Assembly (NCBI RefSeq): GCF_036365525.1
Contig: NC_090409.1
Span: 40,930,437-40,994,436, forward strand
Length of the DNA stretch: 64,000 nucleotides
Direction: 5' to 3'
From: Heterodontus francisci
Taxonomy: Eukaryota
Position 1 is the first letter of the stretch; each line of letters opens with the position of its first letter. A program made the translations under genes and the position numbers. The notes under the pieces are model-generated. The model was given only the letters and a program-made list of their open reading frames with translations, searched no databases and had not been told where the DNA came from. Shown here piece after piece: positions 3,319-32,638 of the stretch.

Positions 3319-3382
3319 ATGAACGTGATTGGAACAGTAATTGGGTTCTCTTTGATTCTCCAGACTGTTTCTGCTGCAGAAG
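3319..3382 (+). CDS. Gene A signal-peptide exon
   Basis: Acceptor tttcttgcag ends at 3316, ATG at 3319, hydrophobic MNVIGTVIGFSLILQTVSAAE, donor AAG|gtaagc (phase 1). Confidence 0.8.
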
Positions 3383-6300
3383 GTAAGCTGCTTCACCCAG
3401 TACCAGTTCACAGGTACGTCAAAGAGCTTTGTGACCGTCGGGTGGGTTGGGGGGGTGGGGGGTTCAGGTGGCACCTCAAGGTCAGAGGTTGCGGGGGTGC
3501 CCCTGCAAACGGACGGTGCAAGTGCCTCAGCATTAATAGCCTGAAAAGACAGGCAACAGCAGATGGGTTGTGAATCGAGTTCAGAGTCACTGAAGCTGCA
3601 TTATCCAGTCTGACATTCCCTATACCGGCACTGAGGAGTCACTGTACTGTCAGAGGATCAGTGGGGTTAGTTTTGGGATTGATACAGGGCTATGGGGAGA
3701 GAGCGGGGCAGTGGGATTAGTTTGGGGATTGATACAGGGCTATGGGGAGAGAGCGGGGCAGTGGGATTAGTTTGGGGATTGATACGGGGCTATGGGGAGA
3801 GAGTGGGGCAGTGGGATTAGTTTGGGGATTGATACAGGGCTATGGGGAGAGAGCGGGGCAGTGGGATTAGTTTGGGGATTGATACGGGGCTATGGGGCGA
3901 GAGCGGGGCAGTGGGATTAGTTTGGGGATTGTTACAGGGCTATGGGGAGAGAGCGGGGCAGTGGGATTAGTTTGGGGATTGATACAGGGCTATGGGGAGA
4001 GAGCGGGGCAGTGGGATTCGTTTCTTCGAATCCTTCTACAAGGTACTTTTTCAAACAACTATTAGTAAAAACGCAAGGCAAAGTGACCCTTTACAGAGGC
4101 CTCACACAGTGGAGGAGAGACAAAAGGAGAGACAAGGAGCTGACTTACAGAACAATCAAAGGGACAAAGTCTACAATCACCGTCCCCAAGTGCCATTGCA
4201 CGCTAACCCCCGAGGGGGAAACAAAACAATTGCATTCAGTCCTTCACCAACAACCGAAAGCAACATACTGAACCAGACCGCAGAGAAAATCAGACAGACG
4301 CAAGAATGTGGAATATAGCTGACCAACTCGCTGTGGGTTATCTCCAATTTAATTTACTCGAATTTTTATCTTTAACTTCAATGTTTATTCCTCTCACCCT
4401 CTCTTGCAGCTGTCGGTAATTTTTGTGTGCACAGATTAATCATTTTGAAGTGAAAAACACTCGTTTACTGAGTCCGAACTGGCTGCTGACAGTGACAATC
4501 ATGTCTGTTTTTTTGTTCTCCCTTTTTGTCCGTGTTCTGAGCACCTCACCAGCTCTTGTGCTTCGGCAGGAGATGGGTAGCACTTCCAGATTCCATCCCT
4601 TCTTTCTCATCGTTTTGATCAGTTTTTAATGCTTATCTGTTAGGTTATAGCGGAGGATGCAGAGAGGTTGCAAAGAGTTCTAGACAGGTTAAGTGAGTGG
4701 ACAAATGGAGTATAATGTAGGGAAGTGTGAAGTTGTTCACTTTGGTCGTTAAAATAGAAAAGCAGAATATTTTTTAAAAGGTGTGAAACTGGTGAGTGTT
4801 GATGTTCAGAGAGACTTGGGGGTACACGTACAAGGAACGCTCAAAGTTAACATGCAAGTGCAGCAGGCTATTCGGAAGGCAAGTGGCATGTTGGCCTTTA
4901 TGGCAAGGGGATTGGAGTACAGGAATAAAAAAGTCTTACTAAAATTGTACATGGCTTTGGTGAGACCGCATCTGGAATACTGTGTTCAGTTTCAGTCTCC
5001 ATATTTGAGAAAGGATAGACTTGTACCAGAGGCAGTGCAGTGAAGATTTACTGAATTGGTCCCTGGGATTTGTTTGGGATTGATACAGGGATATGGGGAG
5101 AGAGTGGGTCACTGGAGTTAGTTTGTGGAGAGGAATAAAGCCAAAAAGACTTGCAGGTTGGTAGGTTAATTGGCCATTATAAATTGCCCCTAGTATGGGT
5201 AGGTGGTAGGGAAATATAGGGACAGGTGGGGATGTGGTAGGAATATGGGATTAGTGTAGGATTAGTGTAAATGGGTGGTTGATGGTCGGCACAGACTCGG
5301 TGGGCCGAAGGGCCTGTTTCAGTGCTGTATCTCTAAACTAACCTAAAACTAAACAGGAGAGAGAGAAAGCTGAGGGGTGACCTGATTGAGGTCTTTAAAA
5401 TGATGGAGGGGTTTCGATCGGGTAGACGTAGAGAGGATGTTTCCACTTGTGGGGGGAGAGACCAGAACTCGGGTCCATCAATATAAGAGAGTCACTAATA
5501 AATCCGATGGGGAATTCCGGAGAAACCTCTTTCCCCAGAGAGTGGTGAGAATGTGGAACTCGCTCCCACAGGGAGTGGTTGAGGTGAATAGTATCGATGT
5601 ATTTAAGGGGGAAGCTGGATAAACACACGAGGGAGAAAGGAATAGAAGGATATGGTGATAGGGTGAGATGGAGAGAGGGGGCGGGTGGGAGGAGGCTCGT
5701 GTGGGGCAGAAACACCAGCACGGGAGCAGATGGGCCGAACGGCCTGTTTCTGTGCTGGAAATTCTTTATTACTCGATGTCCGGCATTGAGATATTGACCA
5801 GAACTGGCTCTTTCTGTTTCAGATGTGCAAAGTGCGTGCAGGGGCAACTCACTGACGATGACTTTCCGGAAATGTGTACACAACTCTACACGCCCTGTGT
5901 TGAAGAAGAAGCTGAAAACAATTTGTAGTTTTGTCACCTGCACCGATAAATCCTACAGGGTGTACTTTAACAAGTCTGAATGTTTCAATGTCGATATTCC
6001 AAAGTTTTCAGACACACATGCCGACAATTACTTCTTAGAACACGGAACAAACGAGCCGCAAATAACAAAGGGACTCCGGGTGCAAAGTGAGTGTGAAAAG
6101 AATAATCTTTAACCCAAACTCCGAGTCCTTGGAGAGGGTGCGGAGGGAGATTTACCGGAATGGTCCCAGGGATGAGGGACTTCAGTCAATGTGGAGAGAC
6201 TGGGAGAAGCTGGGATTGTTCTCCTTAGAGCAGAGAAGGTTAAGGGGGGAGATTTAATCGAGGCGTTCAAAATCATGAGGGGGTTTTGATGGAGTAAATG

Positions 6301-9300
6301 AGGAGAAACTGTCCCCAGTGGCGGGAGGGTCGGTAACCAGAGGGACACAGATTGAGGATAATCGGTAAAAGAACCAGAGAGGGGCGGGGAGAGGAGGAGA
6401 ATTTTTTTGACGCAGTGAGTTGTTGTGATCTGGAACGCGCTGCCTGAAAGGGCGGTGGAAGCAGATTCAATAGTAACTTTCAAAAGGGGGGAATTGGAGA
6501 AATGCTCCTCGTTTTCAAATAAAATCAGAAAATGCTGAAAATACTCGGGGGGTCAGACAGCAACTGTGAAGAGAAACACAGAGTTAACATTTCAGATGTC
6601 TGTAGTATTTTGCTTTTGACCTCGATGTTAAAATTCTTATCCTTCTTTTCAAATCCGTCACTGGCCTCCCTTCACCCTCTCCCTATCTCTGTAACCTCCT
6701 CCAGCCCCTACAACCCTCCCTATCTCTGTAACCTCCTCCAGCCTCCACAACGCTCCCTATCTCTGTAACCTCCTCCAGCCCATACAACCCTCCCTATCTC
6801 TGTAACCTCCTCCAGCCCCTACAACCCTCCCTATCTCTGTAACCTCCTCCAGCCCCGACAACCCTCCCTATCTCTGTAACCTCCTCCAGCCCCTACAACC
6901 CTCCCTATCTCTGTAACCTCCTCCAGCCCCGACAACACCTCCCTATCTCTGTAACCTCCTCCAGCCCCTACAACCCTCCGAGATCTCTGCGCTCCCTCCA
7001 ATTCCGCCCTCTCGCCCATCCCCCCGATTCCCATCACTCCACCATTGGCGGCCGTGCCTTCAGCTGCCTGGGGGCCCTAAGCTCTGGAATTCCCTCCCTA
7101 AACCTCTCCGCCTCTCTCTCTCTCTCTCCTCCTTTAAGATGCTCCTTAAAAAAACCGACCTCTCTGACTGAGCTTTTGGTCGCCGGTCCCTGATATCTCC
7201 TGACGTGGCTCAGGGGTCAGAATATGTCTGATTTACACTCCTGTGAAACACCTTGGGACATTTTACTACGTCAAAAGTGCAACATAAATGCAGGGTGTTG
7301 TTGTTTTGCTACTCTTCTGGTGAAATCAGTGGACGGAAAATCTGTTAGCTTCAAAAACAATCATGAAATCCAACTCATTAGATTAGCATAATATAAAAGC
7401 AAAATACTGCGGATGCTGGAAATCTGAAATAAAAACAGGAAATGCTGGAAATACTCAGCAGGTCTGGCAGCATCTGCGGAGAGAGAAGCCGAGTTAACGT
7501 TTCGGGTCAGTGACCCTTCTTCGGAACTGACAAATATTAGAAATGTAAAAGGTTTGAATCGAGTAAAGCAGGGGGTGGGGCAAGAGATAACAAAGGAGAA
7601 GGTGTTGATCGGACAGGGTCACAGAGAATAACTGACCAGAAGGTCAGAGAGTAAAGACAAACGGTATGTTAAATGTTGTGGGACTACCTTCCATGACGGT
7701 GCTTCTGATATGTCTTCCTTTTTCCTCAACCGAGGATTTCCCCCCACTGTGGTTGACAGGGCCCTCAACCGTGTCCGACCCATTCCCCGCACCTCTACCC
7801 TCATCCCTTCCCCTCCCTCCCAGAACCGTGACAGGGTTCCCCTTGTCCTCACTTTCCACCCCATCAGCCTCCACATCCAAAGGATCATCCTCCGCCATTT
7901 TCGCCACCTCCAGCGTGATGCCACTACCAGTCGCATCTTCCCTTCCCTTCCCCTGTCAGCATTCTGTCCCTCCGTGACACCCTGGTCCACTCCTCCATTA
8001 CCCCCACCACCTCATCCCCTGCCCATGGCACCTTCCCCTGCAATCGCAGGAGGTGTAATACCTGCCCATTTACCTCCTCTCTCCTCACTATCCCAGGCCC
8101 CAAACACTCCTTTCAGGTGAAGCAGCGATTTACTTGTACTTCTTTCAATGTAGTATACTGTATTCGCTGCTCACAGTGTGGTCTCCTCTACACTGGGGAG
8201 ACCAAACGCAGACTGGGTGACCGCTTAGCGGAACACCTCCGCTCAGTCCGCAAGCAGGACCCTGAGCTTCCGGTTGCTGGCCATTTCAACACTCCCCCCT
8301 GCTCTCATGCTCACATCTCTGTCCTGGGATTGCTGCAGTGTTCCAGTGAACATCAACGCAAGCTCGAGGAACAGCATCTCATTTATCGATTAGGCACACT
8401 ACAGCCTGCCGGACTGAACATTGAGTTCAATCATTTCAGAGCATGACGGGCCCCCCATTTTACGTTTAGTTATTTTTTTTCTCATTTTTTATTTTTTGTT
8501 GATTTTATTTTATTTTGTTACTACAGCGCCTACCCACTGTTTTGTTTTCATGTTTGTGCTTGGGGCTGTTCAGTTTTCTGTCAATTAACACCCTCTCTGT
8601 ACTAACGCTTTGTCTTTCAACACACCATTGACTCACCCTTTGCCTTTGCTCCATGACCTTCTGGTCAGTTATTCTCTGTGACCTTGTCCCTATCAATACC
8701 TTCTCTTTTGTTACCTCTTGCCCCACCCCCGCTTTACTTGCTTAAAATCTTGTACATTTCTAATATCTGTCACTTCCGAAGAAGGGTCACTGACCTGAAA
8801 CGTTAACTCTGCTTCTCTCTCCACAGATGCTGCCAGAACTGCTGAGTATTTCCAGCATTTCCTGTTTTTAGGTTTTTAGGTTTTAGAGATACAGCACTGA
8901 AACAGGCCCTTCGGCTGACCGAGTCTGTGCCGACCATCAACCACCCATTTATACTAATCCTACACTAATCCCATATTCCTACCACATCCCCACCTGTCCC
9001 TATACTTCCCTACCACCTACCTATACTAGGGGCAATTTATAATGGCCAATTTACCTACCAACCTGCAAGTCTTTTGGCTTGTGGGAGGAAACCGGAGCAC
9101 CCGGAGGAAACCCACGCAGACACAGGGAGAACTTGCAAACTCCACACAGGCAGTACCCGGAATCGAACCCGGGTCGCTGGAGCTGTGAGGCTGCGGTGCT
9201 AACCACTGCGCCACTGTGCTGAATAGGTTAGCACAAGGCTGTGGAGTCTGATCTGTGATCTGTTTAATGGGCACCCTTTATATTCCAGATTGCAGCCTGC

Positions 9301-12300
9301 CCTCTCCAGAAAGTACTGGAGGCACAGTAAATGAGCAGAAAAGACTCAACGCTGCTTCAGGTAAAGAACAGCTGAAGAAATCATGACTGAACTGTTCGAG
9401 GGGTTTTGACAAGACGGGACAAGTCTGTGGAGTGTAATCGAGGGGTTCAGGGTCGATAAATGCAGAATAACAGATACCCGGGAGTGAGTAAAAGACTGGA
9501 ATCTAATCGAGGGGTTCGGTGGGGTTTATATATAGAATAACAGATACCCGGGAGTGAGTTACAGACTGGAATCTAATCGAGGGGTTCGGGGGGTTTATAT
9601 ATAGAATAACAGATACCCGGGAGTGAGTTACAGACTGGAATCTAATCGAGGGGTTCGGGGGGTTTATATATAGAATAACAGATACCCGGGAGTGAGTTAC
9701 AGACTGGAATCTAATCGAGGGGTTCGGGGGGTTTATATATAGAATAACAGATACCCGGGAGTGAGTTACAGACTGGAATCTAATCGAGGGGTTCGGGGGG
9801 TTTATATATAGAATAACAGATACCCGGGAGTGAGTTACAGACTGGAATCGAATCGAGGGGTTCGGGGGGTTTATATATAGAATAACAGATACCCGGGAGT
9901 GAGTTACAGACTGGAATCTAATCGAGGGGTTCGGGGGGTTTATATATAGAATAACTGATACCCGGGAGTGAGTTACAGACTGGAATCTAATCGAGGGGTT
10001 TGGGGTGGTTTATATATAGAATAACAGATACCCGGGAGTGAGTTACAGACTGGAATCTAATCGAGGGGTTCGGTGGGGTTTATATATAGAATAACAGATA
10101 CCCGGGAGTGAGTTACAGACTGGAATCTAATCGAGGGGTTCGGGTGGTTTATATATAGAATAACAGATACCCGGGAGTGAGTTACAGACTGGAATCTATT
10201 CAAGGGGTTCGGGGGGTTTATATATAGAATAACAGATACCCGGGAGTGAGTTACAGACTGGAATCTAATCGAGGGGTTCGGGGGGTTTATATATAGAATA
10301 ACAGATACCCGGGAGTGAGTTACAGACTGGAAACTAATCGAGGGGTTCGGTGGGGTTTATATATAGAATAACAGATACCCGGGAGTGAGTTACAGACTGG
10401 AATCTAATCGAGGGGATAATATATAGAATAACAAATACCCGGGAGTGAGTTACAGACTGGAATCTAATCGAGGAGTTCGGGTGGTTTTATATAGAATAAC
10501 AGATACCCGGGAGTGAGTTACAGACTGGAATCTAATCGAGGGGTTCGGGTGGTTTATATATCGAATAACAGATACCCGGGCGTGAGTTGCAGACTGGAAT
10601 CTAATCGAGGGGTTGGGTGGGTTTATATATAGAATAACAGATACCCGGGAGTGAGTTACAGACTGGAATCTAATCGAGGGGTTGGGGGGGTTTATATATA
10701 GAATAACAGATACCCGGGAGTGAGTTACAGACTGGAATCTAATCGAGGGGTCCGGGGGGTTTATATATAGAATAGCAGATATCCGGGAGTGAGTTACAGA
10801 CTGGAATCTTATCGAGGGGTTCGGGTGGTTTATATATAGAATAACAGATACCCGGGAGTGAGTTACAGACTGGAATCTAATCGAGGGGTTCGGGGGGTTT
10901 ACATATAGAATAACAGATATCCGGGAGTGAGTTACAGACTGGAATCTAATCGAGGGGTTCGGGTGGTTTATATATAGAATAACAGATACCCGGGAGTGAG
11001 TTACAGACTGGAATCTAATCGAGGGGTTCGGGTGGTTTATATATAGAATAACAGATATCCGGGAGTGAGTTACAGACTGGAATCTAATCGAGGGGTTCGG
11101 GTGGTTTATATATAGAATAACAGATACCCGGGAGGGAGTGACAGACTGGAAACTAATCGAGGGGTTCGGGGGGTTTATATATAGAATAACAGATACCCGG
11201 GAGGGAGTGACAGACTGGAAACTAATCGAGGGGTTCGGTGGGGTTTATATATGGAATAACAGATAACCGGGAGTGAGTTATAGACTGGAATCGTATCGAG
11301 GGGTTCGGGGGGTTTATATATAGAATAACAGATACCCGGGAGTGAGTTACAGACTGGAATCTAATCGAGGGGTTCGGGGGATTTATATATAGAATAACAG
11401 ATACCCGGGAGTGAGTTACAGACTGGAAACTAATCGAGGGGTTCGGTGGGGTTTATATATAGAATAACAGATACCCGGGAGTGAGTTACAGACTGGAATC
11501 TAATCGAGGGGTTTATATATAGAATAACAAATACCCGGGAGTGAGTTACAGACTGGAATCTAATCGAGGGGTTCGGTGGGGTTTATATATAGAATAACAG
11601 ATACCCGGGAGTGAGTTACAGACTGGAATCTAATCGAGGGGTTTATATATAGAATAACAGATACCCGGGAGTGAGTTACAGACTGGAATCTAATCGAGGG
11701 GTTCGGGTGGTTTATATATCGAATAACAGATACCCGGGAGTGAGTTACAGACTGGAATCTAATCGAGGGGTTCGGGTGGTTTATATATCGAATAACAGAT
11801 ACCCGGGAGTGAGTTACAGACTGGAATCTAATCGAGGGGTTCGGGTGGTTTATATATCGAATAACAGATACCCGGGAGTGAGTTACAGACTGGAATCTAA
11901 TCGAGGGGTTCGGGGGGGTTTATATATAGAATAACAGAAACCCGGGAGTGAGTTACAGACTGGAATATCATCGAGGGGTTCGGGTGGTTTATATATAGAA
12001 TAACAGAAACCCGGGAGTGAGTTACAGACTGGAATCTAATCAAGGGGTTCGGGTGGTTTATATATAGAATAAAAGAAACCCGGGAGTGAGTTACAGACTG
12101 GAATCTAATTGAGGGGTTCGGGGGGTTTATATATAGAATAACAGATACCCGAGAGTGAGTAACAGACTGGAATCTAATCGAGGGGTTCGGGGGGTTTATA
12201 TATAGAATAACAGATACCCGGGAGTGAGTTACAGACTGGAATCTAATCGAGGGGTTCGAGGGGTTTACATAGAGAATAACAGATACCCGGAAGTGAGTTA

Positions 12301-15300
12301 CAGACTGGAATCTAATCGAGGGGTTCGGGGTGGTTTATATATAGAATAACAGATACCCGGCAGTGAGTTACAGACTGGAATCTAATCGAGGGGTTGGGGG
12401 GATTTATATATAGAATAGCAGATACCCGGGAGTGAGTTACAGACTGGAATCTAATCGAGGGGTTCGGGGGGTTTATATATAGAATAACAGATAACTGGGA
12501 GTGAGTTACAGACTGGAATCTAATCGAGGGGTTCGAGGGCTTTATATATAGAATAACAGATACCCGGGAGTGAGATACAGACTGGAATCTAATCGAGGGG
12601 TTCGGGGTGGTTTATATATAGAATAACAGATACCCTGCAGTGAGTTACAGACTGGAATCTAATCGAGGGGTTCGGTGGGGTTTATATATAGAATAACAGA
12701 TACCCGGGAGTGAGTTACAGAATGGAATCCAATCGAGGGGTTCGAGGGCTTTATATATAGAATAACAGATACCCGGGAGTGAGTTACAGACTGGAATCTA
12801 ATCGAGGGGTTGGGGGGGTTTATATATAGAATAACAGATACCCGGGAGTGAGTTACAGACTGGAATCTAATCGAGGGGTTCGGGGGGTTTATATATAGAA
12901 TAACAGATAACCAGGAGTAAGTTACAGACTGGAACCTAATCGAGGGGTTCGGGGGGTTTATATATAGAATAACAGATACCCGGGTGTGAGTTACGGACTG
13001 GAAACTAATCGAGGGGTTCGGTGGGGTTAATATATAGAATAACAGATACCCGGGAGTGAGTTACAGACTGGAATCTAATCGAGGGGTTCGGGTGGTTTAT
13101 ATATCGAATAACAGATACCCGGGAGTGAGTTACAGACTGGAATCTAATCGAGGAGTTCGGGGGGTTTATATATAGAATAACAAATACCCGGGAGTGATTT
13201 ACAGACTGGAATCTCATCGAGGGGTTAGGGTGGTTTATATGCAGAATAACAGATACCCGGGAGTGAGTTACAGACTGGAATCTAATCGAAGGGTTCGGGT
13301 GGTTTATATATAGAATAACAGATACCCGGGAGTGAGTTACAGACTGGAATCTAATCGAGGGGTTCGGGTGGTTTATATATAGAATAACAGATACCCGGGA
13401 GTGAGTTACAGACTGGAATCTAATCGAGGGGTTCGGGTGGTTTATATATAGAATAACAGATACCCGGGAGTGAGTTACAGACTGGAATCTAATCGAGGGG
13501 TTAGGGTGGTTTATATATAGAATAACAGAAACCCGGAAGTGAGTTACAGACTGGAATCTAATCGAGGGGTTCGGGTGGTTGACATATAGAAAGACAGAAA
13601 CCCGGAAGTGAGTTACAGACTGGAATCTAATCGAGGGGTTCGGGTGGTTTATATATAGAATAACAGAAACCCGGAAGTGAGTTACAGACTGGAATCTAAT
13701 CGAGGGGTTCGGGTGGTTTATATATAGAATAACAGATACCCGGGAGTGAGTTACAGACTGGAATCTAATCGAGGGGTTAGGGTGGTTTATATATAGAATA
13801 ACAGAAACCCGGGACTGAGTTACAGACTGGAATCTAATCGAGGGGTTCGGGGGGTTTATATATAGAATAACAGATACCCGGGAGTGAGTTACAGACTGGA
13901 ATCTAATCGAGGGGTTCGGGGGGTTTATATATAGAATAACAGATAACCGGGAGTAAGTTACAGACTGGAATCTAATCGAGGGGTTCGAGGGCTTTATATA
14001 TAGAATAACAGATACCCGGGAGTGAGTTACAGACTGGAATCTAATCGAGGGGTTCGGGGGGTTTATATACAGAATAACAGATACCCGGGAGTGAGATACA
14101 GACTGGAATCTAATCGAGGGGTTCGGGGTGGATTATATATAGAATAACAGATACCCGGCAGTGAGTTACAGACTGAAATCTAATCGAGGGGTTCGAGGGC
14201 TTTATATATAGAATAACAGATACCCGGGAGTGAGATACAGACTGGAATCTAATCGAGGGGTTGGGGGGGTTTATATATAGAATAGCAGATACCCGGGAAT
14301 GAGTTACAGACTGGAATCTAATCGAGGGGTTCGGGGGGTTTATATATAGAATAACAGATGCCCGGGAGAGAGTTACAGACTGGAATCTAATCGAGCGGTT
14401 CGGGGGTTTATATATAAAATAACAGATACCCGGGAGTGAGTTACAGACTGGAAACTAATCGAGGGGTTCGGGGTGTTTATATATAGAATAACAGATACCC
14501 GGGAGTGAGTTGCAGACTGGAATCCAATCGAGGGGTTCGGGGGGTTTATATATAGAATAACAGATAACCGGGAGTAAGTTACAGACTGGAACCTAATCGA
14601 GGGGTTCGGGGGGTTTCTATATAGAATAACAGATACCCGGGATTGAGTTACAAACTGGAATCGAATCGAGGGGTTCGGGGGGTTTATATATAGAATAACA
14701 GATACCCGGGTGTGAGTTACGGACTGGAAACTAATCGAGGGGCTCGGTGGGGTTAATATATAGAATAACAGATACCCGGGATTGAGTTACAGACTGGAAT
14801 CGAATCGAGGGGTTCGGGGGGTTTATATATAGAATAACAGATACCCGGGAGTGAGTTACAGACTGGAATCTAATCGAGGGGTTCGGGTGGTTTATATATA
14901 GAATAACAGATACCCGGGAGTGAGTTACAGACTGGAATCTAATCGACGAGTTCGGGGGGTTTATATATAGAATAACAAATACCCGGGAGTGAGTAACAGA
15001 CTGGAATCTAATCGAGGGGTTCGGGGGGTTTATATATAGAACAACAGATACCCGGGAGTGAGTTACAGACTGGAATCTCATCGAGGGGTTAGGGTGGTTT
15101 ATATGCAGAATAACAGATACCCGGGAGTGAGTTACAGACTGGAATCTAATCGAAGGGTTCGGGTGGTTTATATATAGAATAACAGATACCCGGGAGTGAG
15201 TTACAGACTGGAATTTAATCGAGGGGTTCGGGTGGTTTATATATAGAATAACAGAAACCCGGGAGTGAGTTACAGACTGGAATATCATCGAGGGGTTCGG

Positions 15301-18300
15301 GTGGTTTACATATAGAAAGACAGAAACCCGGAAGTGAGTTACAGACTGGAATCTAATCGAGGGGTTAGGGTGGTTTATATATAGAATAACAGATACCCGG
15401 GAGTGAGTTACAGACTGGAATCTAATCGAGGGGTTAGGGTGGTTTATATATAGAATAACAGAAACCCGGGAGTGAGTTACAGACTGGAATCTAATCGAGG
15501 GGTTCGGGGTGGTTTATATATAGAATAACAGATACCCGGGAGTGAGTTACAGACTGGAATCTAATCGAGGGGTACGGGTGGTTTATATATAGAATAACAG
15601 ATACCCGGGAGTGAGTTACAGACTGGAATCTAATCGAGGGGTTAGGGTGGTTTATATATAGAATAACAGATACCCGGGAGTGAGTTACAGACTGGAATCT
15701 AATCGAGGGGTTAGGGTGGTTTATATATAGAATAACAGAAACCCGGGAGTGAGTTACAGACTGGAATCTAATCGAGGGGTTCAAGTGCTTTATATATAGA
15801 ATAGCAGATACCCGGGAGTGAGTTACAGACTGGAATCGAATCGAGGGGTTAGGGTGGTTTATATATAGAATAACAGAAACCCGGGAGTGAGTTACAGACT
15901 GGAATCTAATCGAGGGGTTCAAGTGCTTTATATATAGAATAGCAGATACCCGGGAGTGAGTTACAGACTGGAATCTAATCGAGGGGTTCGGGGGGTTTAT
16001 ATATAGAATAACAGATACCCGGGAGTGAGTTACAGACTGGAATCGAATCGAGGGGTTCGGGGGGTTTATATATAGAATAACAGATACCCGGGAGTGAGTT
16101 ACAGACTGGAATCTAATCGAGGGGTTCGGGGGGTTTATATATAGAATATCAAACACCCGGGAGTGAGTAACAGACTGGAATCTAATCGAGGGGTTAGGGG
16201 GGTTTATATATAGAACAACAGATACTCGGGAGTGAGTTACAGACTGGAATCTCATCGAGGGGTTAGGGTGGTTTATATGTAGAATAACAGAGACCCGGGA
16301 GTGAGTTACAGACTGGAATCTAATCAATGGGTTCGGGGGGGGTTTATATATAGAATAACAGATACCTGGGAGTGAGTTACAGACTGGAATCTAATCGAAG
16401 GGATCGGGTGGTTTATATATAGAATAACAGATACCCGGGAGTGAGTTACATACTGGAATCTAATCGAGGGGTTCGGGTGGTTTATATATAGAATAACAGA
16501 AACCCGGGAGTGAGTTCCAGAGTGGAATATCATCGAGGGGTTCGGGTGGTGTCAATATAGAATAACAGAAACTCGTGAGTGAGTTACAGACTGGAATCTA
16601 ATCGAGGGGTTCGGGGGGTTTATATATAGAATAACAGATACCCGGGAGTGAGTTACAGACAGGAATCGAATCGAGGGGTTCGGGGGGTTTATATATAGAA
16701 TAACAGATAACCGGGAGTAAGTTACAGACTGGAATCTAATCGAGGGGTTCGGGAGGGTTTTGAAATAGAATAACAGATACCCGGGAGTGAGTTACAGACT
16801 GGAATCTAATCGAGGGGTTCGGGTGGTTTATATATAGAATAACAGATACCCGGGAGTGAGTTACAGACTGGAATCTAATCGAGGGGTTCGGGTGGTTTAT
16901 ATATAGAATAACAGATACCCGGGAATGAGTTACAGACTGGAATCTAATCGAGGGTTTCGAGGGGTTTACATAGAGAATAACAGATACCCGGAAGTGAGTT
17001 ACAGACTGGAATCTAATCGAGGGGTTCGGGGGGGTTGAGATATAGAATAACAGATACCCGGAAGTGAGTTACAGACTGGAATCTAATCGAGGGGTTCGGG
17101 AGTGTTTAGAAATAGAATAACAGATACCCGGGAGTGAGTTACAGACTGGAATCTAATCGAAGGGTTCGGGTGGTTTATATATGGAATAACAGATACCCGG
17201 GAGTGAGTTACAGACTGGAATCTAATCGAGGGGTTGGGGGGGGTTTATATATAGAATAGCAGATACCCGGGAGTGAGTTACAGACTGGAATCTAATCGAG
17301 GGGTTCGGGGTGGTTTATATATAGAATAACAGATACCCGGGAGTGAGTTACAGACTGGAATCTAATCGAGGGGTTGGGGGGGTTTATATATAGAATAGCA
17401 GATACCCGGGAGTGAGTTACAGACTGGAATCTAATCGAGGGGTTCGGGGGGTTTATATATAGAATAACAGATACCCGGGAGTGAGTTACAGACTGGAATC
17501 TAATCGAGGGGACCGGGGGGTTTATATATAGAATAACAGATACCCGGGAGTGAGTTACAGACTGGAATCTAATCGAGGGGTTCGGGGGGTTTACATATAG
17601 AATAACAGATACCCGGGAGTGAGTTACAGACTGGAATCTTATCGATTGGTTCGGGGGGTTTACATATAGAATAACAGATACCCGGGAGTGAGTTACAGAC
17701 TGGAATCTAATCGAGGGGTTCGGGGGGTTTACATATAGAATAACAGATACCCGGGAGTGAGTTACAGACTGGAATCTAATCGAGGGGTTCGGGGGGTTTA
17801 CATATAGAATAACAGATACCCGGGAGTGAGTTACAGACTGGAATCTAATCGAGGGGTTCGGGGGGTTTACATATAGAATAGCAGATACCCGGGAGTGAGT
17901 TACAGACTGGAATCTAATCGAGGGGTTCGAGGGCTTTATATATAGAATAGCAGATACCCGGGAGTGAGTTACAGACTGGAATCTAATCGAGGGGTTCGGG
18001 GGGTTTATATATAGAATAACAGATACCCGGGAGTGAGTTACAGACTGGAATCTAATCGAGGGGTTTATATATAGAATAACAGATACCCGGGAGTGAGTTA
18101 CAGACTGGAATCGAATCGAGGGGTTCGGGGGGTTAATATATAGAATAACAGATACCCGGGAGTGAGTTACAGACTGGAATCTAATCGAGGGGTTCGGGTG
18201 GTTTATATATAGAATAACAGTTACCCGGGAGTGAGTTACAGACTGGAATCTAATCGAGGGGTTCGGGGGGTTTATATATAGAATAACAAATACCCGGGAG

Positions 18301-21300
18301 TGAGTAACAGACTGGAATCTAATCGAGGGGTTCGGGGGGTTTATATATAGAACAACAGATGCCCAGAGTGAGCTACAGACTGGAATCTAATCGAGGGGTT
18401 ACGGTGGTTTATATGTAGAATAACAGTTACCCGGGAGTGAGTTACAGACTGGAATCTAACCGAAGGGTTCGGGTGGTTTATATATAGAATAACAGATACC
18501 CGGGAGTGAGTTACATACTGGAATCTAATCGAGGGGTTCGGGTGGTTTATATATAGAATAACAGAAACCCGGGAGTGAGTTACAGACTGGAATCTAATCG
18601 AGGGGTTCGGGTGGTTTATATATAGAATAACAGAAACCCGGGAGTGAGTTACGGACTGGAAACTAATCGAGGGGTTCGGTGGGGTTTATATATAGAATAA
18701 CAGATACCCGGGAGTGAGTTACAGACTGGAATCTAATCGAGGGGTTTATATATAGAATAACAGATACCCGGGAGTGAGTTACAGACTGGAATCTAATCGA
18801 GGGGTTAGGGTGCTTTATATATAGAATAACAGAAACACGGGAGTGAGTTACAGACTGGAATCTAATCGAGGGGTTCGGGGGGTTTATATATAGAATAACA
18901 GAAACCCGGAAGTGAGTTACAGACTGGAATCTAATCGAGGGGTTCGGGGTGCTTTATACATAGAATAACAGATACCCGGCAGTGAGTCACAGACTGGAAT
19001 CTAATCGAGGGGTTCGGGAGGGTTTAGAAATACAGAATAACAGATACCCGGGAGTGAGTTACAGACTGGAATCTAATCGAGGGGTTCGGGGGGTTTATAT
19101 ATAGAATAACAGATACCCGGGAGTGAGTTACAGACTGGAATCTAATCGAGGGGTTCGGGGGGTTTATATATAAAATAACAGATACCCGGGAGTGAGTTAC
19201 AGACTGGAATCTAATCGAGGGGTTCGAGGGCTTTATATATAGAATAACAGATACCCGGGAGTCAGTTACAGACTGGAATCTAATCGAGGGGTTTGGGGTG
19301 GTTTATATATAGAATAACAGATACCTGGGAGTGAGTTACAGACTGGAATCTAATCGAGGGGTTCGGGGGGTTTATATATAGAATAATAGATACCCGGGAG
19401 TGAGTTACAGACTGGAATCTAATCGAGGGGTTCGGGTGGTTTTATATATAGAATAACAGATACCCGGGAGTGAGTTACAGACTGGAATCTAATCGAGGGG
19501 TTCGGGGGGTTTATATATAGAATAACAGATACCCGGGAGTGAGTTACAGACTGGAATCTAATCGAGGGGTTGGGGGGGTTTATATACAGAATAGCAGATA
19601 CCAGGAGTGAGTTACAGACTGGAATCTAATCGAGGGGTTCGAATGCTTTATATATAGAATAGCAGATACCCGGGAGTGAGTTACAGACTGGAATCTTATC
19701 GAGGGGTTCGGGGGGTTTATATATAGAATAACAGATACCCGGGAGTGAGTTACAGACTGGAATCTAATCGAGGGGTTTGGGGTGGTTTATATATAGAATA
19801 ACAGATACCCGGGAGTGAGTTACAGACTGGAATCTAATCGAGGGGTTTGGGGTGGTTTATATATAGAATAACAGATACCTGGGAGTGAGTTACAGACTGG
19901 AATCTAATCGAGGGGTTCGGGGGGTTTATATATAGAATAACAGATACCCGGGAGTGAGTTACAGACTGGAATCTAATCGAGGGGTTCGGGTGGTTTATAT
20001 ATAGAATAACAGATACCCGGGAGTGAGTTACAGACTGGAATCTAATCGAGGGGTTCGGGGGGGTTTATATATAGAATAACAGATACCCGGGAGTGAGTTA
20101 CAGACTGGAATCTAATCGAGGGGTTGGGGGGGTTTATATACAGAATAGCAGATACCAGGAGTGAGTTACAGACTGGAATCTAATCGAGGGGTTCGAATGC
20201 TTTATATATAGAATAGCAGATACCCGGGAGTGAGTTACAGACTGGAATCTTATCGAGGGGTTCGGGGGGTTTATATATAGAATAACAGATACCCGGGAGT
20301 GAGTTACAGACTGGAATCTAATCGAGGGGTTCGGGGGGTTTATATATAGAATAACAGATACCCGGGAGTGAGTTACAGACTGGAATCTAATCGAGGGGTT
20401 CGGGGGGTTTATATATAGAATAACAGATACCCGGGAGTGAGTTACAGACTGGAATCTAATCGAGGGGATCGGCGGGTTTTATATATAGAATAACTGATAT
20501 CCGGGAGTGAGTTGCAGACTGGAATCTAATCGAGGGTGTAGGTAAGGTTCTTTAGGTGCGGGAAAGTCACCCGGCGGACATTAATTCCCCTTTGGTAACG
20601 GGTTATTTCTTTCCCCGATGATTGAACTGATCCAGGTCGCTCTCAGTTTAATTCAGCAAATCAGCTTCTGCCATTGGACGGGTCAGTCTGTTGCAAAGGT
20701 CTGGAGGTTCTCCTGGAAATGACGATGGCCCTCGACATCAAAACCCGATGTGGATGTAAACACTTGGGCAGGTCCTCCCTCACCTTATTCTATAGAACCA
20801 ACAGCCTTCACAAAACTAATCAAATCCCTTCATTAGCTCATCAAACTCAATCAACAGTGACTTGGCGAGCCCATGCAGCCCTCTTGAGCCTGTTCCGTCG
20901 TTCTGTGGGATCACAGCTGAGTTGTATCCCTGTTCCAGCAACTCTTTCGGCTTCAAATCCGCCAATCATTTCCAACCGGGTGGAGGCTGTCGTCGTGCCA
21001 CGTCATTGACTGTGATGATGCGTCCAACTGGGAATGGACCCTCGTCACCGAGGGTATTATCCTGCAGAGTTCAGTGTTTGCTGTGTCTCAGTGTGTTTAA
21101 TGCACTCACTCGCCTCTGATTGAGACTGCCGCAGGCTGGAGACCCCATCCCCACCCCCAACTCCAGAGACTTGAGCCCCAGAATCCGGTCAAACACTCAC
21201 AGTGCAGTGCTGAGGGAGTGCCGCACTGTCGGAGGGTCAGTGCTGAGGGAGTGCTGCAATGTCAGAGGGTCAGTACTGAGGGAGCGCTGCAATGTCGGAG

Positions 21301-22257
21301 GGTCAGTACTGAGGGAGTGCTGCAATGTCAGAGGGTCAGTACTGAGGGAGCGCTGCACTGTCGGAGGGTCAGTACTGAGAGAGTGCTGCACTGTCGGAGG
21401 GTCAATACTGAGGGAGTGCCGCACTGTCGGAGGTTCCGTCTTTCAGATGAGACATTAAACCGAGACCCCCATCTTCCCTCTCAGGTGGGTGTAAAAGATC
21501 TCACGGCCACTATTTGGAAGAAGAGCGGGGGGAGGGAGTTCTCCCCGGTGTCCTGGGGACAATATTTATCCCTCAAACAAAATCACTAAAAAAAAAACAG
21601 ATGATCTGGGTCATTATCTCATTGCTGTTTGTGGGATCTTGCTGTGCGCAAATTGGCTGCTGCGTTTCCTACATTACAACAGTGAGCACACTTCAAAAAA
21701 CAAGTCCTTGATTGGCTTTGAAGCTTTGGGACGTTCTGATGTTATTTTTACATTTTTTTTTTAGAGATACAGCACTGAAACAGGCCCTTCGGCCCACCGA
21801 GCCTGTGCCGACCATCAACCACCCATTTATGCTAATCCTGCACTAATTCCATATTTCTATCACATCCCCACCTGTCCCTATATTACCCTACCACCTACCT
21901 GTACTAGGGGCAATTTATAATGGCCAATTTACCTATCAACCTGCAAGTCTTTGGCATGTGGGAGGAAACCGGAGCACCCGGAGAAAACCCACGCAGACAC
22001 AGGGAGAACTTGCAAACTCCACACAGGCAGTACCCGGAATCGAACCCGGGTCGCTGGAGCTGTGAGGCTGCGGTGCTAACCACTGCGCCACTGTGTTAGA
22101 ACTTCCTGGAGAAATGCAAAGTATGTCTTTTCCAGAGTTTTGTTCCTACTTTTAATAAGAATTCCTTCCTGTTATTTTTACAGCACACACATTGCCGACT
22201 GGTCCGGGAGCTTTGCTGATGACTGCACTCCTTGTATGTCTGTCTGTTCAACACTAG
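3319..22257 (+). CDS. Gene A: predicted GPI-anchored single Ig V-like domain protein (CD2/CD48/Thy-1-like architecture), 157 aa; join(3319..3382,5823..6086,9289..9360,22184..22257)
   Basis: Four exons with canonical AG/GT boundaries and phase-1 introns splice to an open 474-nt frame: MNVIGTVIGFSLILQTVSAAE-DVQSACRGNSLTMTFRKCVHNSTRPVLKKKLKTICSFVTCTDKSYRVYFNKSECFNVDIPKFSDTHADNYFLEHGTNEPQITKGLRVQ-NCSLPSPESTGGTVNEQKRLNAAS-AHTLPTGPGALLMTALLVCLSVQH*. The family assignment is inferred from architecture only. Confidence 0.75.
3661..4017 (+). repeat. 50-bp tandem repeat, about 7 copies
   Basis: Unit gtgggattagtttggggattgatacagggctatggggagagagcggggca; resembles a CR1 3' UTR segment. Confidence 0.9.
4650..5760 (+). 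mobile_element. CR1 ORF2 fragments interrupted by a partial HE1-type SINE (about 5140-5353)
   Basis: [20 protein letters not shown] and QRVVRMWNSLP segments; SINE tail gggccgaagggcctgtttcagtgctgtatctctaaacta. Confidence 0.8.
5823..6086 (+). CDS. Gene A Ig V-like domain exon
   Basis: tttctgtttcag|AT ... CAA A|gtgagt; 264 nt, phase 1-1, open. Strand pattern G-N-S-L-T-M and F-N-V-D-I...D-N-Y-F-L-E resembles CD2-family N-terminal domains that lack the F-strand Cys. Confidence 0.75.
6125..6500 (+). mobile_element. CR1 3' fragment (second subfamily; also at about 43310-43715, 54240-54850 and 56243-56490)
   Basis: Shared gagagggtgcggagggagatttaccggaatggtccc...gtgatctggaacgcgctgcctgaaagggcggtgg sequence. 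Confidence 0.8.
6625..7305 (+). mobile_element. L2 LINE 3' end with a 37-bp tandem expansion (about 6678-6979)
   Basis: [20 protein letters not shown]...LRS...[16 protein letters not shown]...LLKT-type L2 ORF2 C-terminus; unit ccctatctctgtaacctcctccagcccctacaaccct. Confidence 0.8.
7392..8870 (+). mobile_element. Penelope-like retroelement remnant with GIY-YIG endonuclease and inverted pseudo-LTRs
   Basis: ORF 8117-8446 FTCTSFNVVYCIRCSQCGLLYTGETKRRLGDRLAEH and upstream RVPLVLTFHP; about 7430-7650 is the reverse complement of about 8640-8870. Confidence 0.88.
8878..9219 (-). mobile_element. HE1-type tRNA-derived V-SINE, full length
   Basis: Reverse complement reads gcacagtggcgcagtggttagcaccgcagcctcacagctccagcgacccgggttcgattcc (A/B boxes), then the V-domain gggtttcctccgggtgctccggtttcctcccac. 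Confidence 0.9.
9289..9360 (+). CDS. Gene A stalk exon
   Basis: tttatattccag|AT ... TCAG|gtaaag; 72 nt, phase 1-1; NCSLPSPESTGGTVNEQKRLNAAS, in a short unique island between a SINE and the satellite. Confidence 0.7.
9435..20537. repeat. 69-bp satellite array, about 160 copies, in intron 3 of gene A
   Basis: Unit gaataacagatacccgggagtgagttacagactggaatctaatcgaggggttcggggggtttatatata; 23-aa periodicity in the spurious ORFs. Confidence 0.97.
21125..21745 (+). mobile_element. Deu-domain SINE with 33-bp expansion (about 21205-21432)
   Basis: Same unit and core as 2622-3295, with a degenerate head. Confidence 0.8.
21760..22096 (-). mobile_element. HE1-type V-SINE
   Basis: Highly similar to 8878-9219. 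Confidence 0.9.
22184..22257 (+). CDS. Gene A GPI-signal exon with stop codon
   Basis: gttatttttacag|CA ... CAC TAG|gtgagt; spacer plus terminal hydrophobic stretch (GALLMTALLVCLSV) and no cytoplasmic tail. Confidence 0.75.
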
Positions 22258-22489
22258 GTGAGTCTGATGTATATATTATATCACACCCCACAATGTCCTT
22301 GGACCTGTGAACCTCCTTAAACAACTTCACCTGAAGACATAGAGAGACAGGGATGCACAGTGCTTAAAAGGGCCCAACATCACCAGTTCATCGCACTGGG
22401 ACGTCTAATCTGTGCTTTAGTCTTGCAGTGGGTGCACTGTCTCGGCAGAACCGTCTAGACAATAACTGGACAAGAGGCTGAGGTGGGCG

Positions 22490-28400: not shown

Positions 28401-28525
28401 GAGGAGTTCGGGGGGTTTATATATAGAATAACAGATACCCGGGAGTGAGTTACAGACTGGAATCTAAACAACGGGTTCTGTGGTGGGTTTATGTATAGAA
28501 TTACAGACACGATGGAATCTAATCT
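22490..28525. repeat. 69-bp satellite array, about 85 copies
   Basis: Same unit and orientation as 9435-20537. Confidence 0.97.
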
Positions 28526-28597
28526 GTCTTTGATTGCCTTTTCTCCCGATGTCGCGCTTGCTCTGATTTTGATTTTATAACGAAATCCAGTCTTGTG

Positions 28598-29840: not shown

Positions 29841-30035
29841 CACCAAAGGTCAACGAGATGAAGGCTGTTTATTTTAGAAACCCTGATTGATTTCCCTGAC
29901 CATCTCCCTGTTGATACGTCTTGTGTTCTCTTTATCTCTTTGCAGCTGTCTGTTGCCTTGCTCTCTTGGGCTTTCGGATATTGGAGAGATTTACAGAACG
30001 AAGGTAAAGCTTGGACAGTGGTTCTGAGCGTCATG

Positions 30036-31937: not shown

Positions 31938-31984
31938 TGACAACAGATAAACACATAACCACCACCATTTCTTGTTGATTTCAG

Positions 31985-32065
31985 GTGCCAGACTCTTTCT
32001 ACCTTGTCGGATGTAAAACAGACTGGACCACAACGTTCAATAAAAGTCTTTTGCAGTGTCAATCA
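31985..32065 (+). other. Putative non-coding terminal exon of gene A with polyA signal
   Basis: The donor right after the gene A stop needs a downstream exon. Acceptor ttcttgttgatttcag ends at 31984 and AATAAA is at 32039-32044. Confidence 0.45.
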
Positions 32066-32638
32066 TCCAACGGAGCCTCGAGTTCTTTGTCTGAACCATG
32101 GAGTTAAAGCCCGCCCACCACCGACACTGTCCATCCCCCGCGTGCTCCAAGCTCTTTCACACAAGCCCTGTCTTTGATGAATCAAGCTATTACTTCAATG
32201 TTCCCTCGTTTTTATCCTCGGCTGTTTTCCACAACTCTCCCGGGTTGTCGAGCCGGAGGTCTGAGAATGCACAGACGGAATCGCAAATGCTGAGGCTCGA
32301 GATCCAGTGCTGATCTCAAAGCTGAAGTGAGGTAAAATCCAAGAGTTTGAGAGACAGATCATGAGAAGGACAAGGGTTCACGTTTCACACGGGACGAGGT
32401 TTCTTTAACCCAAACAGTATTATCAGCAGAAGGACTGCAGCCGAATTGCCCAAGATGAGTGCATACAAGAGGATGGGATGTCTGCACGATTCTGAAAGCA
32501 GAGGGTTATTGCCTGATTATTATTACAGATCGCAAAACCCGAACTGCCTGCCCTCCTTAACTCTCCTGAACGCAGTTCCTCCTGCTCTCTTATCTAGATC
32601 CGCATTTTTCATATATGAGCACCAGAGGGTGAGGCTAT

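What the first reader, a model, noticed from the sequence alone, without database searches (positions are those of the whole stretch)
3319..22257. Hidden GPI-anchored single-Ig-domain gene with a non-canonical cysteine pattern
Seen: a 474-nt coding sequence spread over 19 kb, with two of four exons invisible in the ORF track. The domain lacks the C-strand Trp and the F-strand Cys (D-N-Y-F-L), yet the mature protein has six Cys. The first (QSAC) and last (VQNC) sit like the N- to C-terminal disulfide pair of Thy-1, while the E-F region resembles CD2-family N-domains. Known: GPI-linked Ig proteins of this kind include Thy-1, CD160 and CD48/CD58. I do not recognise this sequence as any of them. 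Inference: a divergent and possibly undescribed leukocyte surface protein or ligand, encoded tail-to-tail with the VJ-C1 gene.
Basis: partly seen in the sequence, partly recalled or inferred. Interest (0 to 1): 0.78.

Follow-up and report, generated by a model that had tools for sequence, protein, structure and literature searches.

The report
Shark GPI-type cryptic Ig-domain gene
A real, spliced horn-shark gene near the MHC class III marker VWA7 encodes a small surface protein whose single antibody-like domain lacks the usual hallmark residues and belongs to an unnamed family seen so far only in sharks.

Summary
The four + strand exons (3319-3382, 5823-6086, 9289-9360, 22184-22257) total 474 nt. 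All have GT..AG borders and phase-1 introns. They reproduce NCBI protein XP_067874694.1, "uncharacterized protein [Heterodontus francisci]", 157 aa, so the gene is annotated, not hidden. Spliced contigs in 4 of 4 runs (one sample, one study) carry the exon 1-2 and 2-3 joints. The exon 3-4 joint was not tested.

Pfam finds nothing in the domain. A 12-sequence AlphaFold model is confident (pLDDT 93-97 over residues 21-110) and is a V-type Ig fold (Dpr11 Z 12.8, CD2 domain 1 Z 12.7, CD48 Z 11.6). The canonical B-F cysteines and the tryptophan are absent. Co-variation among relatives suggests three other disulfides.

Relatives occur in eight galeomorph shark species and all are unnamed. Every relative with a complete C-terminus is a transmembrane protein. 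Many share a stalk, membrane segment and tail with B7-like V-set paralogues. Only the horn-shark copy ends in a 13-residue hydrophobic tail of GPI-signal type. GPI anchoring, tissue and ligand remain untested.

Verdict: a new variant of a known kind.

The parts
3319..3382 (+). Coding exon 1: start codon and signal peptide (residues 1-21 plus the first base of codon 22). An acceptor-like pyrimidine tract plus AG sits 2 nt before the ATG, so a 5'UTR exon probably lies upstream.
   Evidence: Sequence. Hydrophobic core at residues 3-14. Joint 3382>5823 in 4 of 4 runs. Exact match to P0001 1-21.
5823..6086 (+). Coding exon 2: the whole Ig V-like domain except its last Cys (residues 22-110). It holds five Cys and the N-glycosylation sequons N42 and N71.
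   Evidence: Contigs cover it with 0 other letters in 4 of 4 runs. Homologues. AlphaFold pLDDT 93-97. Ig fold.
9289..9360 (+). Coding exon 3: the last Cys (C111), a Ser/Thr/Pro stalk and the small-residue stretch N130-A-A-S that could hold the GPI attachment site.
   Evidence: Joint 6086>9289 GT..AG in 4 of 4 runs. Exact match to P0001 111-133.
22184..22257 (+). Coding exon 4: an 8-residue polar spacer, a 13-residue hydrophobic core (residues 143-155), two more residues and TAG. A donor-like GTGAGT follows the stop directly.
   Evidence: Kyte-Doolittle scan. Exact match to P0001 135-157. The joint to exon 3 was not tested with reads.
9428..28507 (.). A 69-bp satellite array (about 275 copies) that fills almost all of intron 3 and resumes at 22488, after exon 4. 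It is interrupted by a non-satellite island that holds exon 4. The ORF list puts the island at about 20.6-22.5 kb.
   Evidence: Tandem Repeats Finder. Composition. ORF list.
8990..9220 (+). A SINE copy ending about 70 nt before the exon 3 acceptor. A near-identical copy at 21870-22099 ends about 85 nt before the exon 4 acceptor. The exons themselves are not part of the SINE.
   Evidence: Pairwise alignment.

Best explanation
The locus is an expressed four-exon gene for a 157-aa precursor.

Shown:
- The signal-peptide exon, one exon for a roughly 90-residue V-type Ig-like domain, a stalk exon and a short hydrophobic C-terminal exon are joined through phase-1 introns.
- The domain belongs to an unnamed family found only in galeomorph sharks.
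- The family has no Pfam model and lacks the B-F disulfide and the core Trp.

Inferred from co-variation and strand topology:
- Three other disulfides hold the domain. C27-C111 clamps the A strand to the end of G. C39-C75 ties the BC loop to the start of E. C56-C61 closes the C'-C'' hairpin.
- Hydrophobic residues (M34/F36 and L93) probably fill the place of the lost core pair.

Inferred from sequence features:
- After signal-peptide cleavage near residue 19-20, the C-terminal 25-27 residues are exchanged for a GPI anchor at N130 or A132.
- The result is a glycosylated single V-like domain (N42, N71, N110) on a short O-glycosylated stalk in the outer membrane leaflet.
- With no cytoplasmic part, it would act as a ligand or counter-receptor for another surface or secreted protein, most likely through the GFCC' face as CD2-family and B7-family V domains do.
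- The GPI-type tail most likely arose by shortening of the transmembrane exon that relatives still have.
For: Gene and splicing:
- establish the exons, the phases and the identity to XP_067874694.1.
- One search shows both tested joints in 4 of 4 runs, with depth 20-487 and silent unique intron bins.

Family:
- In one search, 11 of 1.84 billion representatives reach E<=0.001. Seven carry the domain. S. canicula P0002 scores E 1.1e-15 at 48% identity.
- In one search, 40 hits are all from sharks and 11 carry the domain.
- Searches show that every name is 'uncharacterized' or 'hypothetical'.
- Searches show no Pfam match above threshold on the domain.

Fold:
- One search gives pLDDT 93-97 in each 10-residue block over residues 21-110, with 86 residues at 90 or more. 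The five models give mean pLDDT 76.5-77.2.
- One search gives 297 Foldseek matches at E<=0.001, and every row shown is an Ig domain.
- One search gives Z 11.7 for BARF1 and Z 11.6 for CD48 (rmsd 2.0 over 85 residues).
- One search gives Z 12.8 for Dpr11 and Z 12.7 for CD2 d1 (rmsd 1.6 over 87 residues).
- (ESM features) finds V-set clusters nearest, at 0.92.

Disulfides:
- P0016 lacks C39 and C75 together.
- The 4 of 4 subgroup-B sequences with a complete N-terminus lack C27.
- All 6 subgroup-B sequences carry a new Cys at position 79 and keep C111.

GPI-type end:
- The hydrophobic core is 13 residues long with 2 residues after it.
- Five relatives have 19-residue membrane segments followed by 54-119 residues.
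Against: - No GPI predictor or release assay was available. A 13-residue hydrophobic core is at the short end for a GPI signal.
- The stop codon sits directly before a donor-like GTGAGT. In one run the contig extends 1,547 nt beyond exon 2, which is more than fits before the satellite at 22488. Exon 4 may therefore be internal, and the stop may be a recent truncation.
- The exon 3-4 joint was not seen in reads.
- The four runs are one sample of one study. They may be the same data NCBI used for its model.
- The disulfide pairing rests on one co-loss, one subgroup swap and topology.
- No ligand, tissue or cell type is known.
- Sequence methods do not link the domain to Ig. hhalign against 22 V-set paralogues aligns only 22 columns (P 0.058). 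The PDB profile search gives a best E of 0.063, to a non-Ig protein.
Confidence: 0.6

Rival explanations
1. It is a truncated transmembrane family member and not a GPI protein. A stop at the end of the former membrane exon leaves a hydrophobic stub that is too short. The product is then secreted, retained and degraded, or the mRNA is subject to nonsense-mediated decay. The gene would be a decaying or soluble-decoy copy.
For: All relatives with a complete C-terminus have 19-residue membrane segments and tails of 54-119 residues. The stop lies directly before GTGAGT. The 2,047-nt contig of run X4 extends 1,547 nt 3' of exon 2, which suggests further exons after the stop.
Against: The domain keeps all six cysteines and all invariant positions of the family. 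The transcript is present in 4 of 4 runs at depth up to 487. The small residues N-A-A-S, an 8-residue spacer and a hydrophobic end form the standard layout of a GPI signal (the layout is established knowledge). No tail-like exon was found downstream by tblastn at E<=20.
Confidence: 0.22
2. It is the shark orthologue or a divergent member of a named mammalian family. The candidates are Thy-1 (single V domain, GPI) and the CD2/SLAM family (CD48 and CD58, which are GPI-linked with a V domain lacking the canonical disulfide). The figure legend read in PMC10751288 says slamf genes map to the elasmobranch MHC.
For: CD2 d1 (Z 12.7), CD48 (Z 11.5-11.6), CD58 (Z 10.8-11.1), 2B4 and SLAM are among the best structural matches. 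The mature size of about 110 residues, the three N-glycan sites and the GPI-type end resemble Thy-1 (recalled). The slamf statement comes from passages read.
Against: No sequence search links it to any named protein. No Pfam V-set match was found. The CD2-family matches tie within 1 Z with Dpr, IgLON, VL and BARF1. There is no C2-set second domain, which CD2-family members have. Thy-1 keeps the canonical B-F disulfide (recalled) and this protein does not. VWA7 and the VJ-C1 gene are the neighbours here, not the Thy-1 neighbourhood (recalled).
Confidence: 0.08
3. It is a Ly6/uPAR three-finger protein like the GPI-linked LY6G6/LY6G5 genes, which lie near VWA7 in the human class III region (recalled). 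Alternatively, the ORFs are chance products among LINE fragments.
For: The position is near VWA7. The protein is small, cysteine-rich and has a GPI-type end. Exon 2 lies between LINE reverse-transcriptase fragments.
Against: The model is an Ig sandwich with Z up to 12.8, not a three-finger fold. It has six cysteines, not eight to ten, and no Pfam UPAR_LY6 match. Spliced contigs and homologues in seven other species exclude chance.
Confidence: 0.01

Closest known systems
CD2/SLAM-family N-terminal V domains, especially the GPI-linked CD48 and CD58
   Same: They share a V-type Ig fold without the canonical B-F disulfide and a GPI-type membrane attachment in some members. The structural matches are CD2 d1 Z 12.7 (rmsd 1.6 over 87 residues), CD48 Z 11.6 (rmsd 2.0 over 85) and CD58 Z 10.8-11.1.
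   Different: This protein has one domain and no C2-set domain. It has three extra disulfides. There is no detectable sequence similarity. The structural scores tie with unrelated Ig families.
Thy-1 (CD90)
   Same: Both are a single V-like domain of about 110 residues with several N-glycans, a GPI-type end and a cysteine near each end of the domain that could clamp the N- and C-termini. The Thy-1 features are recalled and were not checked with a tool.
   Different: Thy-1 keeps the B-F disulfide (recalled). Here those positions hold M34/F36 and L93. No sequence link was found and the genomic neighbourhood differs.
Shark B7/butyrophilin-like V-set paralogues, auto-named 'CD276 homolog', 'MOG-like', 'VTCN1-like' and 'CD86-like'
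   Same: Eight of the other ten domain-bearing proteins share the stalk, membrane segment and Tyr-free cytoplasmic tail with these V-set proteins. One whale-shark protein (P0011) carries both domains.
   Different: P0001 itself has none of the shared stalk, membrane segment or tail. Its domain does not align with their V domain beyond 22 E-F columns (P 0.058).
The adjacent non-rearranging VJ-C1 gene and UrIg (Flajnik et al. 2023, as described in PMC12227049 and PMC10751288)
   Same: Both are Ig-superfamily genes of the elasmobranch MHC class III region. The VJ-C1 gene and this gene are neighbours here. They also appear to be neighbours in S. torazame, where one gene model (P0004, 68.6-kb contig) fuses them.
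   Different: These are different domain types (VJ plus C1). UrIg is described as VJ plus three C1 domains, and only one C1 exon was seen here. I therefore did not equate the neighbour with UrIg.

Membership tests
Immunoglobulin superfamily, V-type domain | Two-sheet Greek-key beta sandwich with strands A B C C' (C'') D E F G | tested here: met
   The AlphaFold model has pLDDT 93-97 and eight strands. Foldseek gives 297 hits at E<=0.001, all shown rows being Ig. VIA-align gives Z 11.7-12.8 with rmsd 1.6-2.3 over 84-90 residues.
Immunoglobulin superfamily, V-type domain | Canonical B-F disulfide and conserved Trp in strand C | tested here: not met
   The protein has no Trp. There is no Cys in strand B (residues 32-36), and L93 stands where hhalign places the F-strand Cys of the V-set paralogues. 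Known Ig domains such as CD2 d1 also lack the pair, so this does not exclude the fold.
Immunoglobulin superfamily, V-type domain | Match to a Pfam Ig model (V-set, ig, I-set) | tested here: not met
   P0001 and exon 2 give no Ig match at E<=10. Of the 10 members whose only ectodomain is this one, 1 (P0016) gives a sub-threshold V-set hit (E 0.056, 14.1 bits against a cut-off of 26) in the D-E-F register.
Immunoglobulin superfamily, V-type domain | Domain in one exon bounded by phase-1 introns | tested here: met
   The last Cys alone lies in the next exon.
GPI-anchored proteins | N-terminal signal peptide plus a C-terminal hydrophobic segment with no cytoplasmic tail, preceded by a polar spacer and small omega/omega+2 residues | tested here: met
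   The hydrophobic core spans 143-155 with 2 residues after it. The spacer is H135-G142. Candidate sites are N130-A-A or A132-S-A. This was done by inspection and a hydropathy scan only.
GPI-anchored proteins | Positive call by a trained predictor, or release by PI-PLC | not testable with these tools
   No NetGPI or PredGPI was available here, and there is no bench.
Thy-1 | Sequence orthology and the canonical disulfide | tested here: not met
   The canonical pair is absent. No named hit appears. No Thy-1 sequence came from any tool, so a direct comparison was not made.
CD2/SLAM family | V domain followed by a C2-set domain, with family sequence similarity | tested here: not met
   The protein has a single domain. 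There is no sequence link. Structural similarity is present but tied with other Ig families.
Ly6/uPAR | Three-finger fold with 8-10 cysteines | tested here: not met
   The fold is Ig, the domain has six cysteines, and there is no Pfam match.
Unnamed shark six-cysteine V-like family (this report) | Significant sequence similarity over the whole domain, with invariant C56, C61, Y66, N71, I80 and C111 | tested here: met
   phmmer gives E 1.1e-15 to 4.3e-04 for six other shark proteins. Invariant columns are listed. The tree splits two subgroups at 99/98 support, and P0001 falls in the subgroup that has C27.

The most novel reading that the evidence does not exclude
The six-cysteine V-like protein and the non-rearranging VJ-C1 gene next to it may be a co-inherited receptor-ligand pair of the shark MHC class III region. 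The lipid-anchored V-like domain would be the cell-surface docking partner of the VJ-C1 product. This would be analogous to other MHC-linked receptor-ligand pairs, such as NKp30-B7H6 (recalled from the literature). What I have is conserved adjacency in two shark orders. In the horn shark the two genes are convergent, about 12 kb apart. In S. torazame one 68.6-kb contig yields a gene model that fuses both. Nothing here tests binding.
Probability: 0.08. Interest if true: 0.78.

Novelty: new variant of a known kind. Interest (0 to 1): 0.52.

Why it matters
Sharks are the oldest living lineage with an MHC-based adaptive immune system, and their class III region holds relics of antigen-receptor origins (PMC10751288 and PMC12227049, passages read).

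This locus adds an Ig-like domain family that sequence methods miss entirely. Pfam gives nothing, and it has none of the hallmark Cys-Trp-Cys residues. Only structure prediction with a family alignment reveals it.

The family shows two things worth testing:
- A V-type sandwich can be rebuilt on three peripheral disulfides.
- Two different ectodomains appear on one stalk, membrane segment and tail in a clustered gene family.

The horn-shark copy may also be a natural case of a switch from a transmembrane to a GPI-type anchor. It sits beside a non-rearranging VJ-C1 gene whose partner is unknown. The family deserves a name and a Pfam model, and it would otherwise stay labelled 'uncharacterized' in every shark genome.

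Tried and rejected
1. AlphaFold on exon 2 alone without an alignment gave pLDDT 38.7. It was useless and I did not search with it.

2. Pfam on exon 2 and on all family members gave no domain match.

3. A profile of the family against PDB sequences gave a best E of 0.063. The match was a 24-residue motif in the fibrinogen-like domain of angiopoietin-1. I treat it as chance, because the fold is Ig.

4. hhalign of the domain against 22 V-set paralogues aligned 22 local columns at P 0.058. The global mode gave nothing.

5. The third word-indexed search, with a 10-sequence alignment, returned only 6 proteins and no new species. Neither nor one search listed P0001 itself. I cannot explain that.

6. 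tblastn of exon 2 against the window found no paralogue.

7. tblastn of 45 of the 49 stored proteins against the window found no stalk, membrane or tail exon at E<=0.01. The four repetitive proteins were left out. A laxer search of 22258-33000 with five tails gave only noise in the satellite.

8. A weak V-like hit at 46674-46949 contains stop codons and was dropped.

9. The Ly6/uPAR idea, raised by the VWA7 neighbourhood, was rejected on fold and cysteine count.

10. Papers:
- Four full-text searches found no description of this family. These included the six accession or locus names of family members.
- The UrIg paper in J Immunol 2023 (PMC10530332) is not held. I know it only through passages of PMC12227049 and PMC10751288.
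- Supplements are closed. The gene tables of PMC10751288 might list this gene.

11. I did not equate the neighbouring gene with UrIg.

Full report
WHAT IS THERE. The window is shark DNA. NCBI names the only exact protein match as Heterodontus francisci. Their lengths are 64, 264, 72 and 74 nt, 474 nt in all. Each acceptor is a pyrimidine tract plus AG, each donor is GTAAG or GTGAG, and all three introns are phase 1. I translated each exon on its own. The four peptides are exact substrings of the public protein P0001 (XP_067874694.1, 'uncharacterized protein', 157 aa) at residues 1-21, 23-109, 111-133 and 135-157. The three split codons give its residues 22, 110 and 134. The model is therefore already in RefSeq. 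It is hidden only from an ORF track: exon 3 lies in a 43-aa ORF and exon 4 in none of 30 aa or more.

IS IT TRANSCRIBED AND SPLICED. Four public runs hold exon 2 with all 23 sampled words. They come from one sample of one study, and their RNA status is only guessed by the index. I laid their contigs on 3335-9334.
- One contig per run (663, 663, 539 and 2,047 nt; depth 20, 24, 487 and 80) covers exon 2 without a mismatch.
- Each contig carries the joints 3380>5821 and 6086>9289, both with GT..AG ends. The first reads equally as 3382>5823.
- The unique intron bins 4135-4334 and 4335-4534 have depth 0-1 in all four runs, so the runs behave as RNA.
- This counts as one independent observation, not four. 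It may be the same data behind the NCBI model.
- The exon 3>4 joint lies 12.8 kb away, outside the 6,000 letters allowed, and was not tested.
- The X4 contig runs 1,547 nt beyond exon 2. That is more than exon 3, exon 4 and the 230 nt before the satellite at 22488 can hold. The donor-like GTGAGT directly after the stop may therefore be used, and I could not resolve this.

RELATIVES. phmmer with exon 2 against 1.84 billion representatives gave 11 proteins at E<=0.001.
- I read all of them. Four (P0003, P0005, P0006, P0010) are repetitive proteins matched in 4-12 short stretches, and I set them aside.
- Seven carry the domain: P0001 itself, plus proteins of Scyliorhinus canicula (E 1.1e-15, 48% identity), S. 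torazame, Chiloscyllium punctatum (two), Cetorhinus maximus and Rhincodon typus.
- A profile search then gave 40 proteins, all from sharks. Of these, 11 carry the domain. By their precomputed Pfam, 26 carry a V-set domain instead; I read 23 of them and did not fetch P0041-P0043. Three have no ectodomain.
- Hemiscyllium ocellatum and Carcharodon carcharias were added, making eight species in all.
- I looked up four of the eight species. They fall in four orders (Heterodontiformes, Carcharhiniformes, Orectolobiformes, Lamniformes), all in Galeomorphii. The orders of the other four species are recalled and add no further order.
- No ray, chimaera, bony fish or tetrapod protein appeared. The deep search was single-sequence, however, and the profile searches are word-indexed and length-limited, so absence elsewhere is not shown.
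- Every source name is 'uncharacterized' or 'hypothetical'.
- Four full-text searches, one of them on six accession or locus names, found no paper on the family. Supplements were closed.

THE DOMAIN. Pfam finds nothing in it. Among the 10 members whose only ectodomain is this one, 1 gives a sub-threshold V-set hit (E 0.056) in the D-E-F register. AlphaFold without an alignment failed, with pLDDT 38.7.

With the 12-sequence family alignment (A4, first row P0001) the five models agree, with mean pLDDT 76.5-77.2. Residues 21-110 score 93-97 in every block of ten. The strands lie at 23-27, 32-34, 47-50, 53-56, 67-70, 76-80, 90-94 and 102-109. The fold searches gave these results:
- Foldseek finds 297 PDB chains at E<=0.001. 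Every row shown is an Ig domain.
- The Foldseek-independent search of 48,161 chains gives Z 11.7 for BARF1 (rmsd 1.6 over 84 residues) and Z 11.6 for CD48 (rmsd 2.0 over 85). DIP/Dpr, CD4, B7-1, CD166 and CD58 follow.
- The re-ranking of Foldseek's list gives Dpr11 Z 12.8, rat CD2 Z 12.7 (rmsd 1.6 over 87) and CD2 d1 Z 12.5.
- These rows tie within 1 Z. The fold is V/I-type Ig, but no one family is singled out.
- ESM features also place V-set clusters nearest, at 0.92. That is a lead only.

CYSTEINES. The precursor has no Trp. It has Cys at 27, 39, 56, 61, 75 and 111, and at 152 in the tail. The local hhalign alignment to the V-set paralogues is not significant (P 0.058), but it puts L93 on their F-strand Cys.

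The family splits into two subgroups at 99/98 support.
- In the subgroup of P0001, one gene (P0016/P0017) has lost C39 and C75 together.
- In the other subgroup, the 4 of 4 sequences with a complete N-terminus lack C27.
- All 6 sequences of that subgroup have a new Cys at position 79 and keep C111.

Standard V-domain topology is established knowledge. It puts the BC and DE loops at one end, and the AB loop, the EF loop and the C-terminus at the other. With that topology the evidence points to C39-C75, C27-C111 (C79-C111 in the other subgroup) and the C56-C61 hairpin. This is inference, because I had no model coordinates. N71 is invariant in 12 of 12 sequences, and 9 of 12 keep the glycosylation sequon there.

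THE C-TERMINUS. After C111 come a Ser/Thr/Pro stalk and the small residues N130-A-A-S. An 8-residue polar spacer follows, then a 13-residue hydrophobic core (143-155) and two last residues. Five relatives scanned the same way have 19-residue membrane segments followed by 54-119 residues. P0001 is thus the only member read here with a GPI-type end. I had no GPI predictor. The core is short, however, and the stop sits just before a donor-like site. A recent truncation of a transmembrane exon is therefore the main rival.

FAMILY ARCHITECTURE. Eight of the other ten domain-bearing proteins share a stalk, membrane segment and Tyr-free tail with the V-set paralogues. Those paralogues are auto-named CD276-, MOG-, VTCN1- or CD86-like. 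One whale-shark protein has both domains in series. In six other species the family members listed likewise share one contig length per species.

NEIGHBOURHOOD.
- V-set (E 6.9e-14) and C1-set (E 3.9e-09) exons lie on the minus strand at 36588-36232 and 35095-34727. They are convergent with this gene.
- Two consecutive VWA7_N pieces lie on the + strand at 58549-58992 (E 4.8e-17, profile positions 1-91) and 61111-61356 (E 1.8e-11, profile positions 91-126).
- VWA7 is an MHC class III gene in humans (established knowledge).
- The S. torazame model P0004, from a 68.6-kb contig, fuses a VJ part (63% identical to the window's), a C1 part (45%) and this domain (47%), all read in one direction. The two genes are therefore neighbours there too, but apparently in tandem and not convergent.
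- Passages of PMC10751288 and PMC12227049 describe UrIg as a non-rearranging VJ gene with three C1 domains in the elasmobranch class III region. I saw one C1 exon only, so I do not equate the two.

VERDICT. The Ig reading, the odd cysteine pattern and the lack of a named relative are supported. GPI anchoring is likely but unproven, and leukocyte expression is untested. The gene is a member of a shark-restricted, unnamed, structurally cryptic Ig-like family. I class it as a new variant of a known kind, of moderate interest. The untested possibility that raises it is a receptor-ligand relation with the adjacent VJ-C1 gene.

Noticed in passing
window 9428-28507: A 69-bp satellite of about 275 copies fills nearly all of intron 3 and resumes after exon 4. 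A 140-bp higher-order period runs from 22488 to 28507. Exon 4 sits on a non-satellite island of about 2 kb inside it.
   Followed up: partly
window 8990-9220 and 21870-22099: Two near-identical copies of a SINE of about 230 nt end 70-85 nt upstream of the acceptors of exons 3 and 4. The exons are not derived from it.
   Followed up: yes
window 22258 onward; run X4 contig: The stop codon of exon 4 is followed directly by GTGAGT. One spliced contig extends 1,547 nt 3' of exon 2, which is more than fits before the satellite. There may be further 3' exons, perhaps former cytoplasmic exons now untranslated.
   Followed up: no
window 36588-34727 (-), and P0004 of S. torazame: The VJ-C1 gene next door is 63% (VJ) and 45% (C1) identical to the front part of a catshark gene model that runs on into this family's domain. 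The two genes are linked in both species but oriented differently.
   Followed up: partly
window 58549-58992 and 61111-61356 (+): Two consecutive pieces of the VWA7 N-terminal domain (Pfam PF25107, E 4.8e-17 and 1.8e-11) confirm the MHC class III marker at the right end of the window.
   Followed up: yes
family proteins P0009, P0014 and others, around residues 61-80 of P0001: The stretch from the fourth Cys through strand E resembles a 24-residue motif of the angiopoietin-1 fibrinogen-like domain (E 0.063-0.09). It is probably chance, since the fold differs.
   Followed up: no
family proteins P0022, P0027, P0047: Some annotated isoforms of the B7-like paralogues have a signal peptide, stalk, membrane segment and tail but no ectodomain. 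This suggests that the domain exon can be skipped.
   Followed up: no
window 4783-5622, 6087-6538, 37133-38445 (-), 59157-60938 (+): LINE reverse-transcriptase fragments flank exon 2 on both sides, and longer copies lie elsewhere in the window.
   Followed up: no
The two profile searches did not list P0001 itself, although it was a row of both query alignments and its length is within range. I have no explanation.
   Followed up: no
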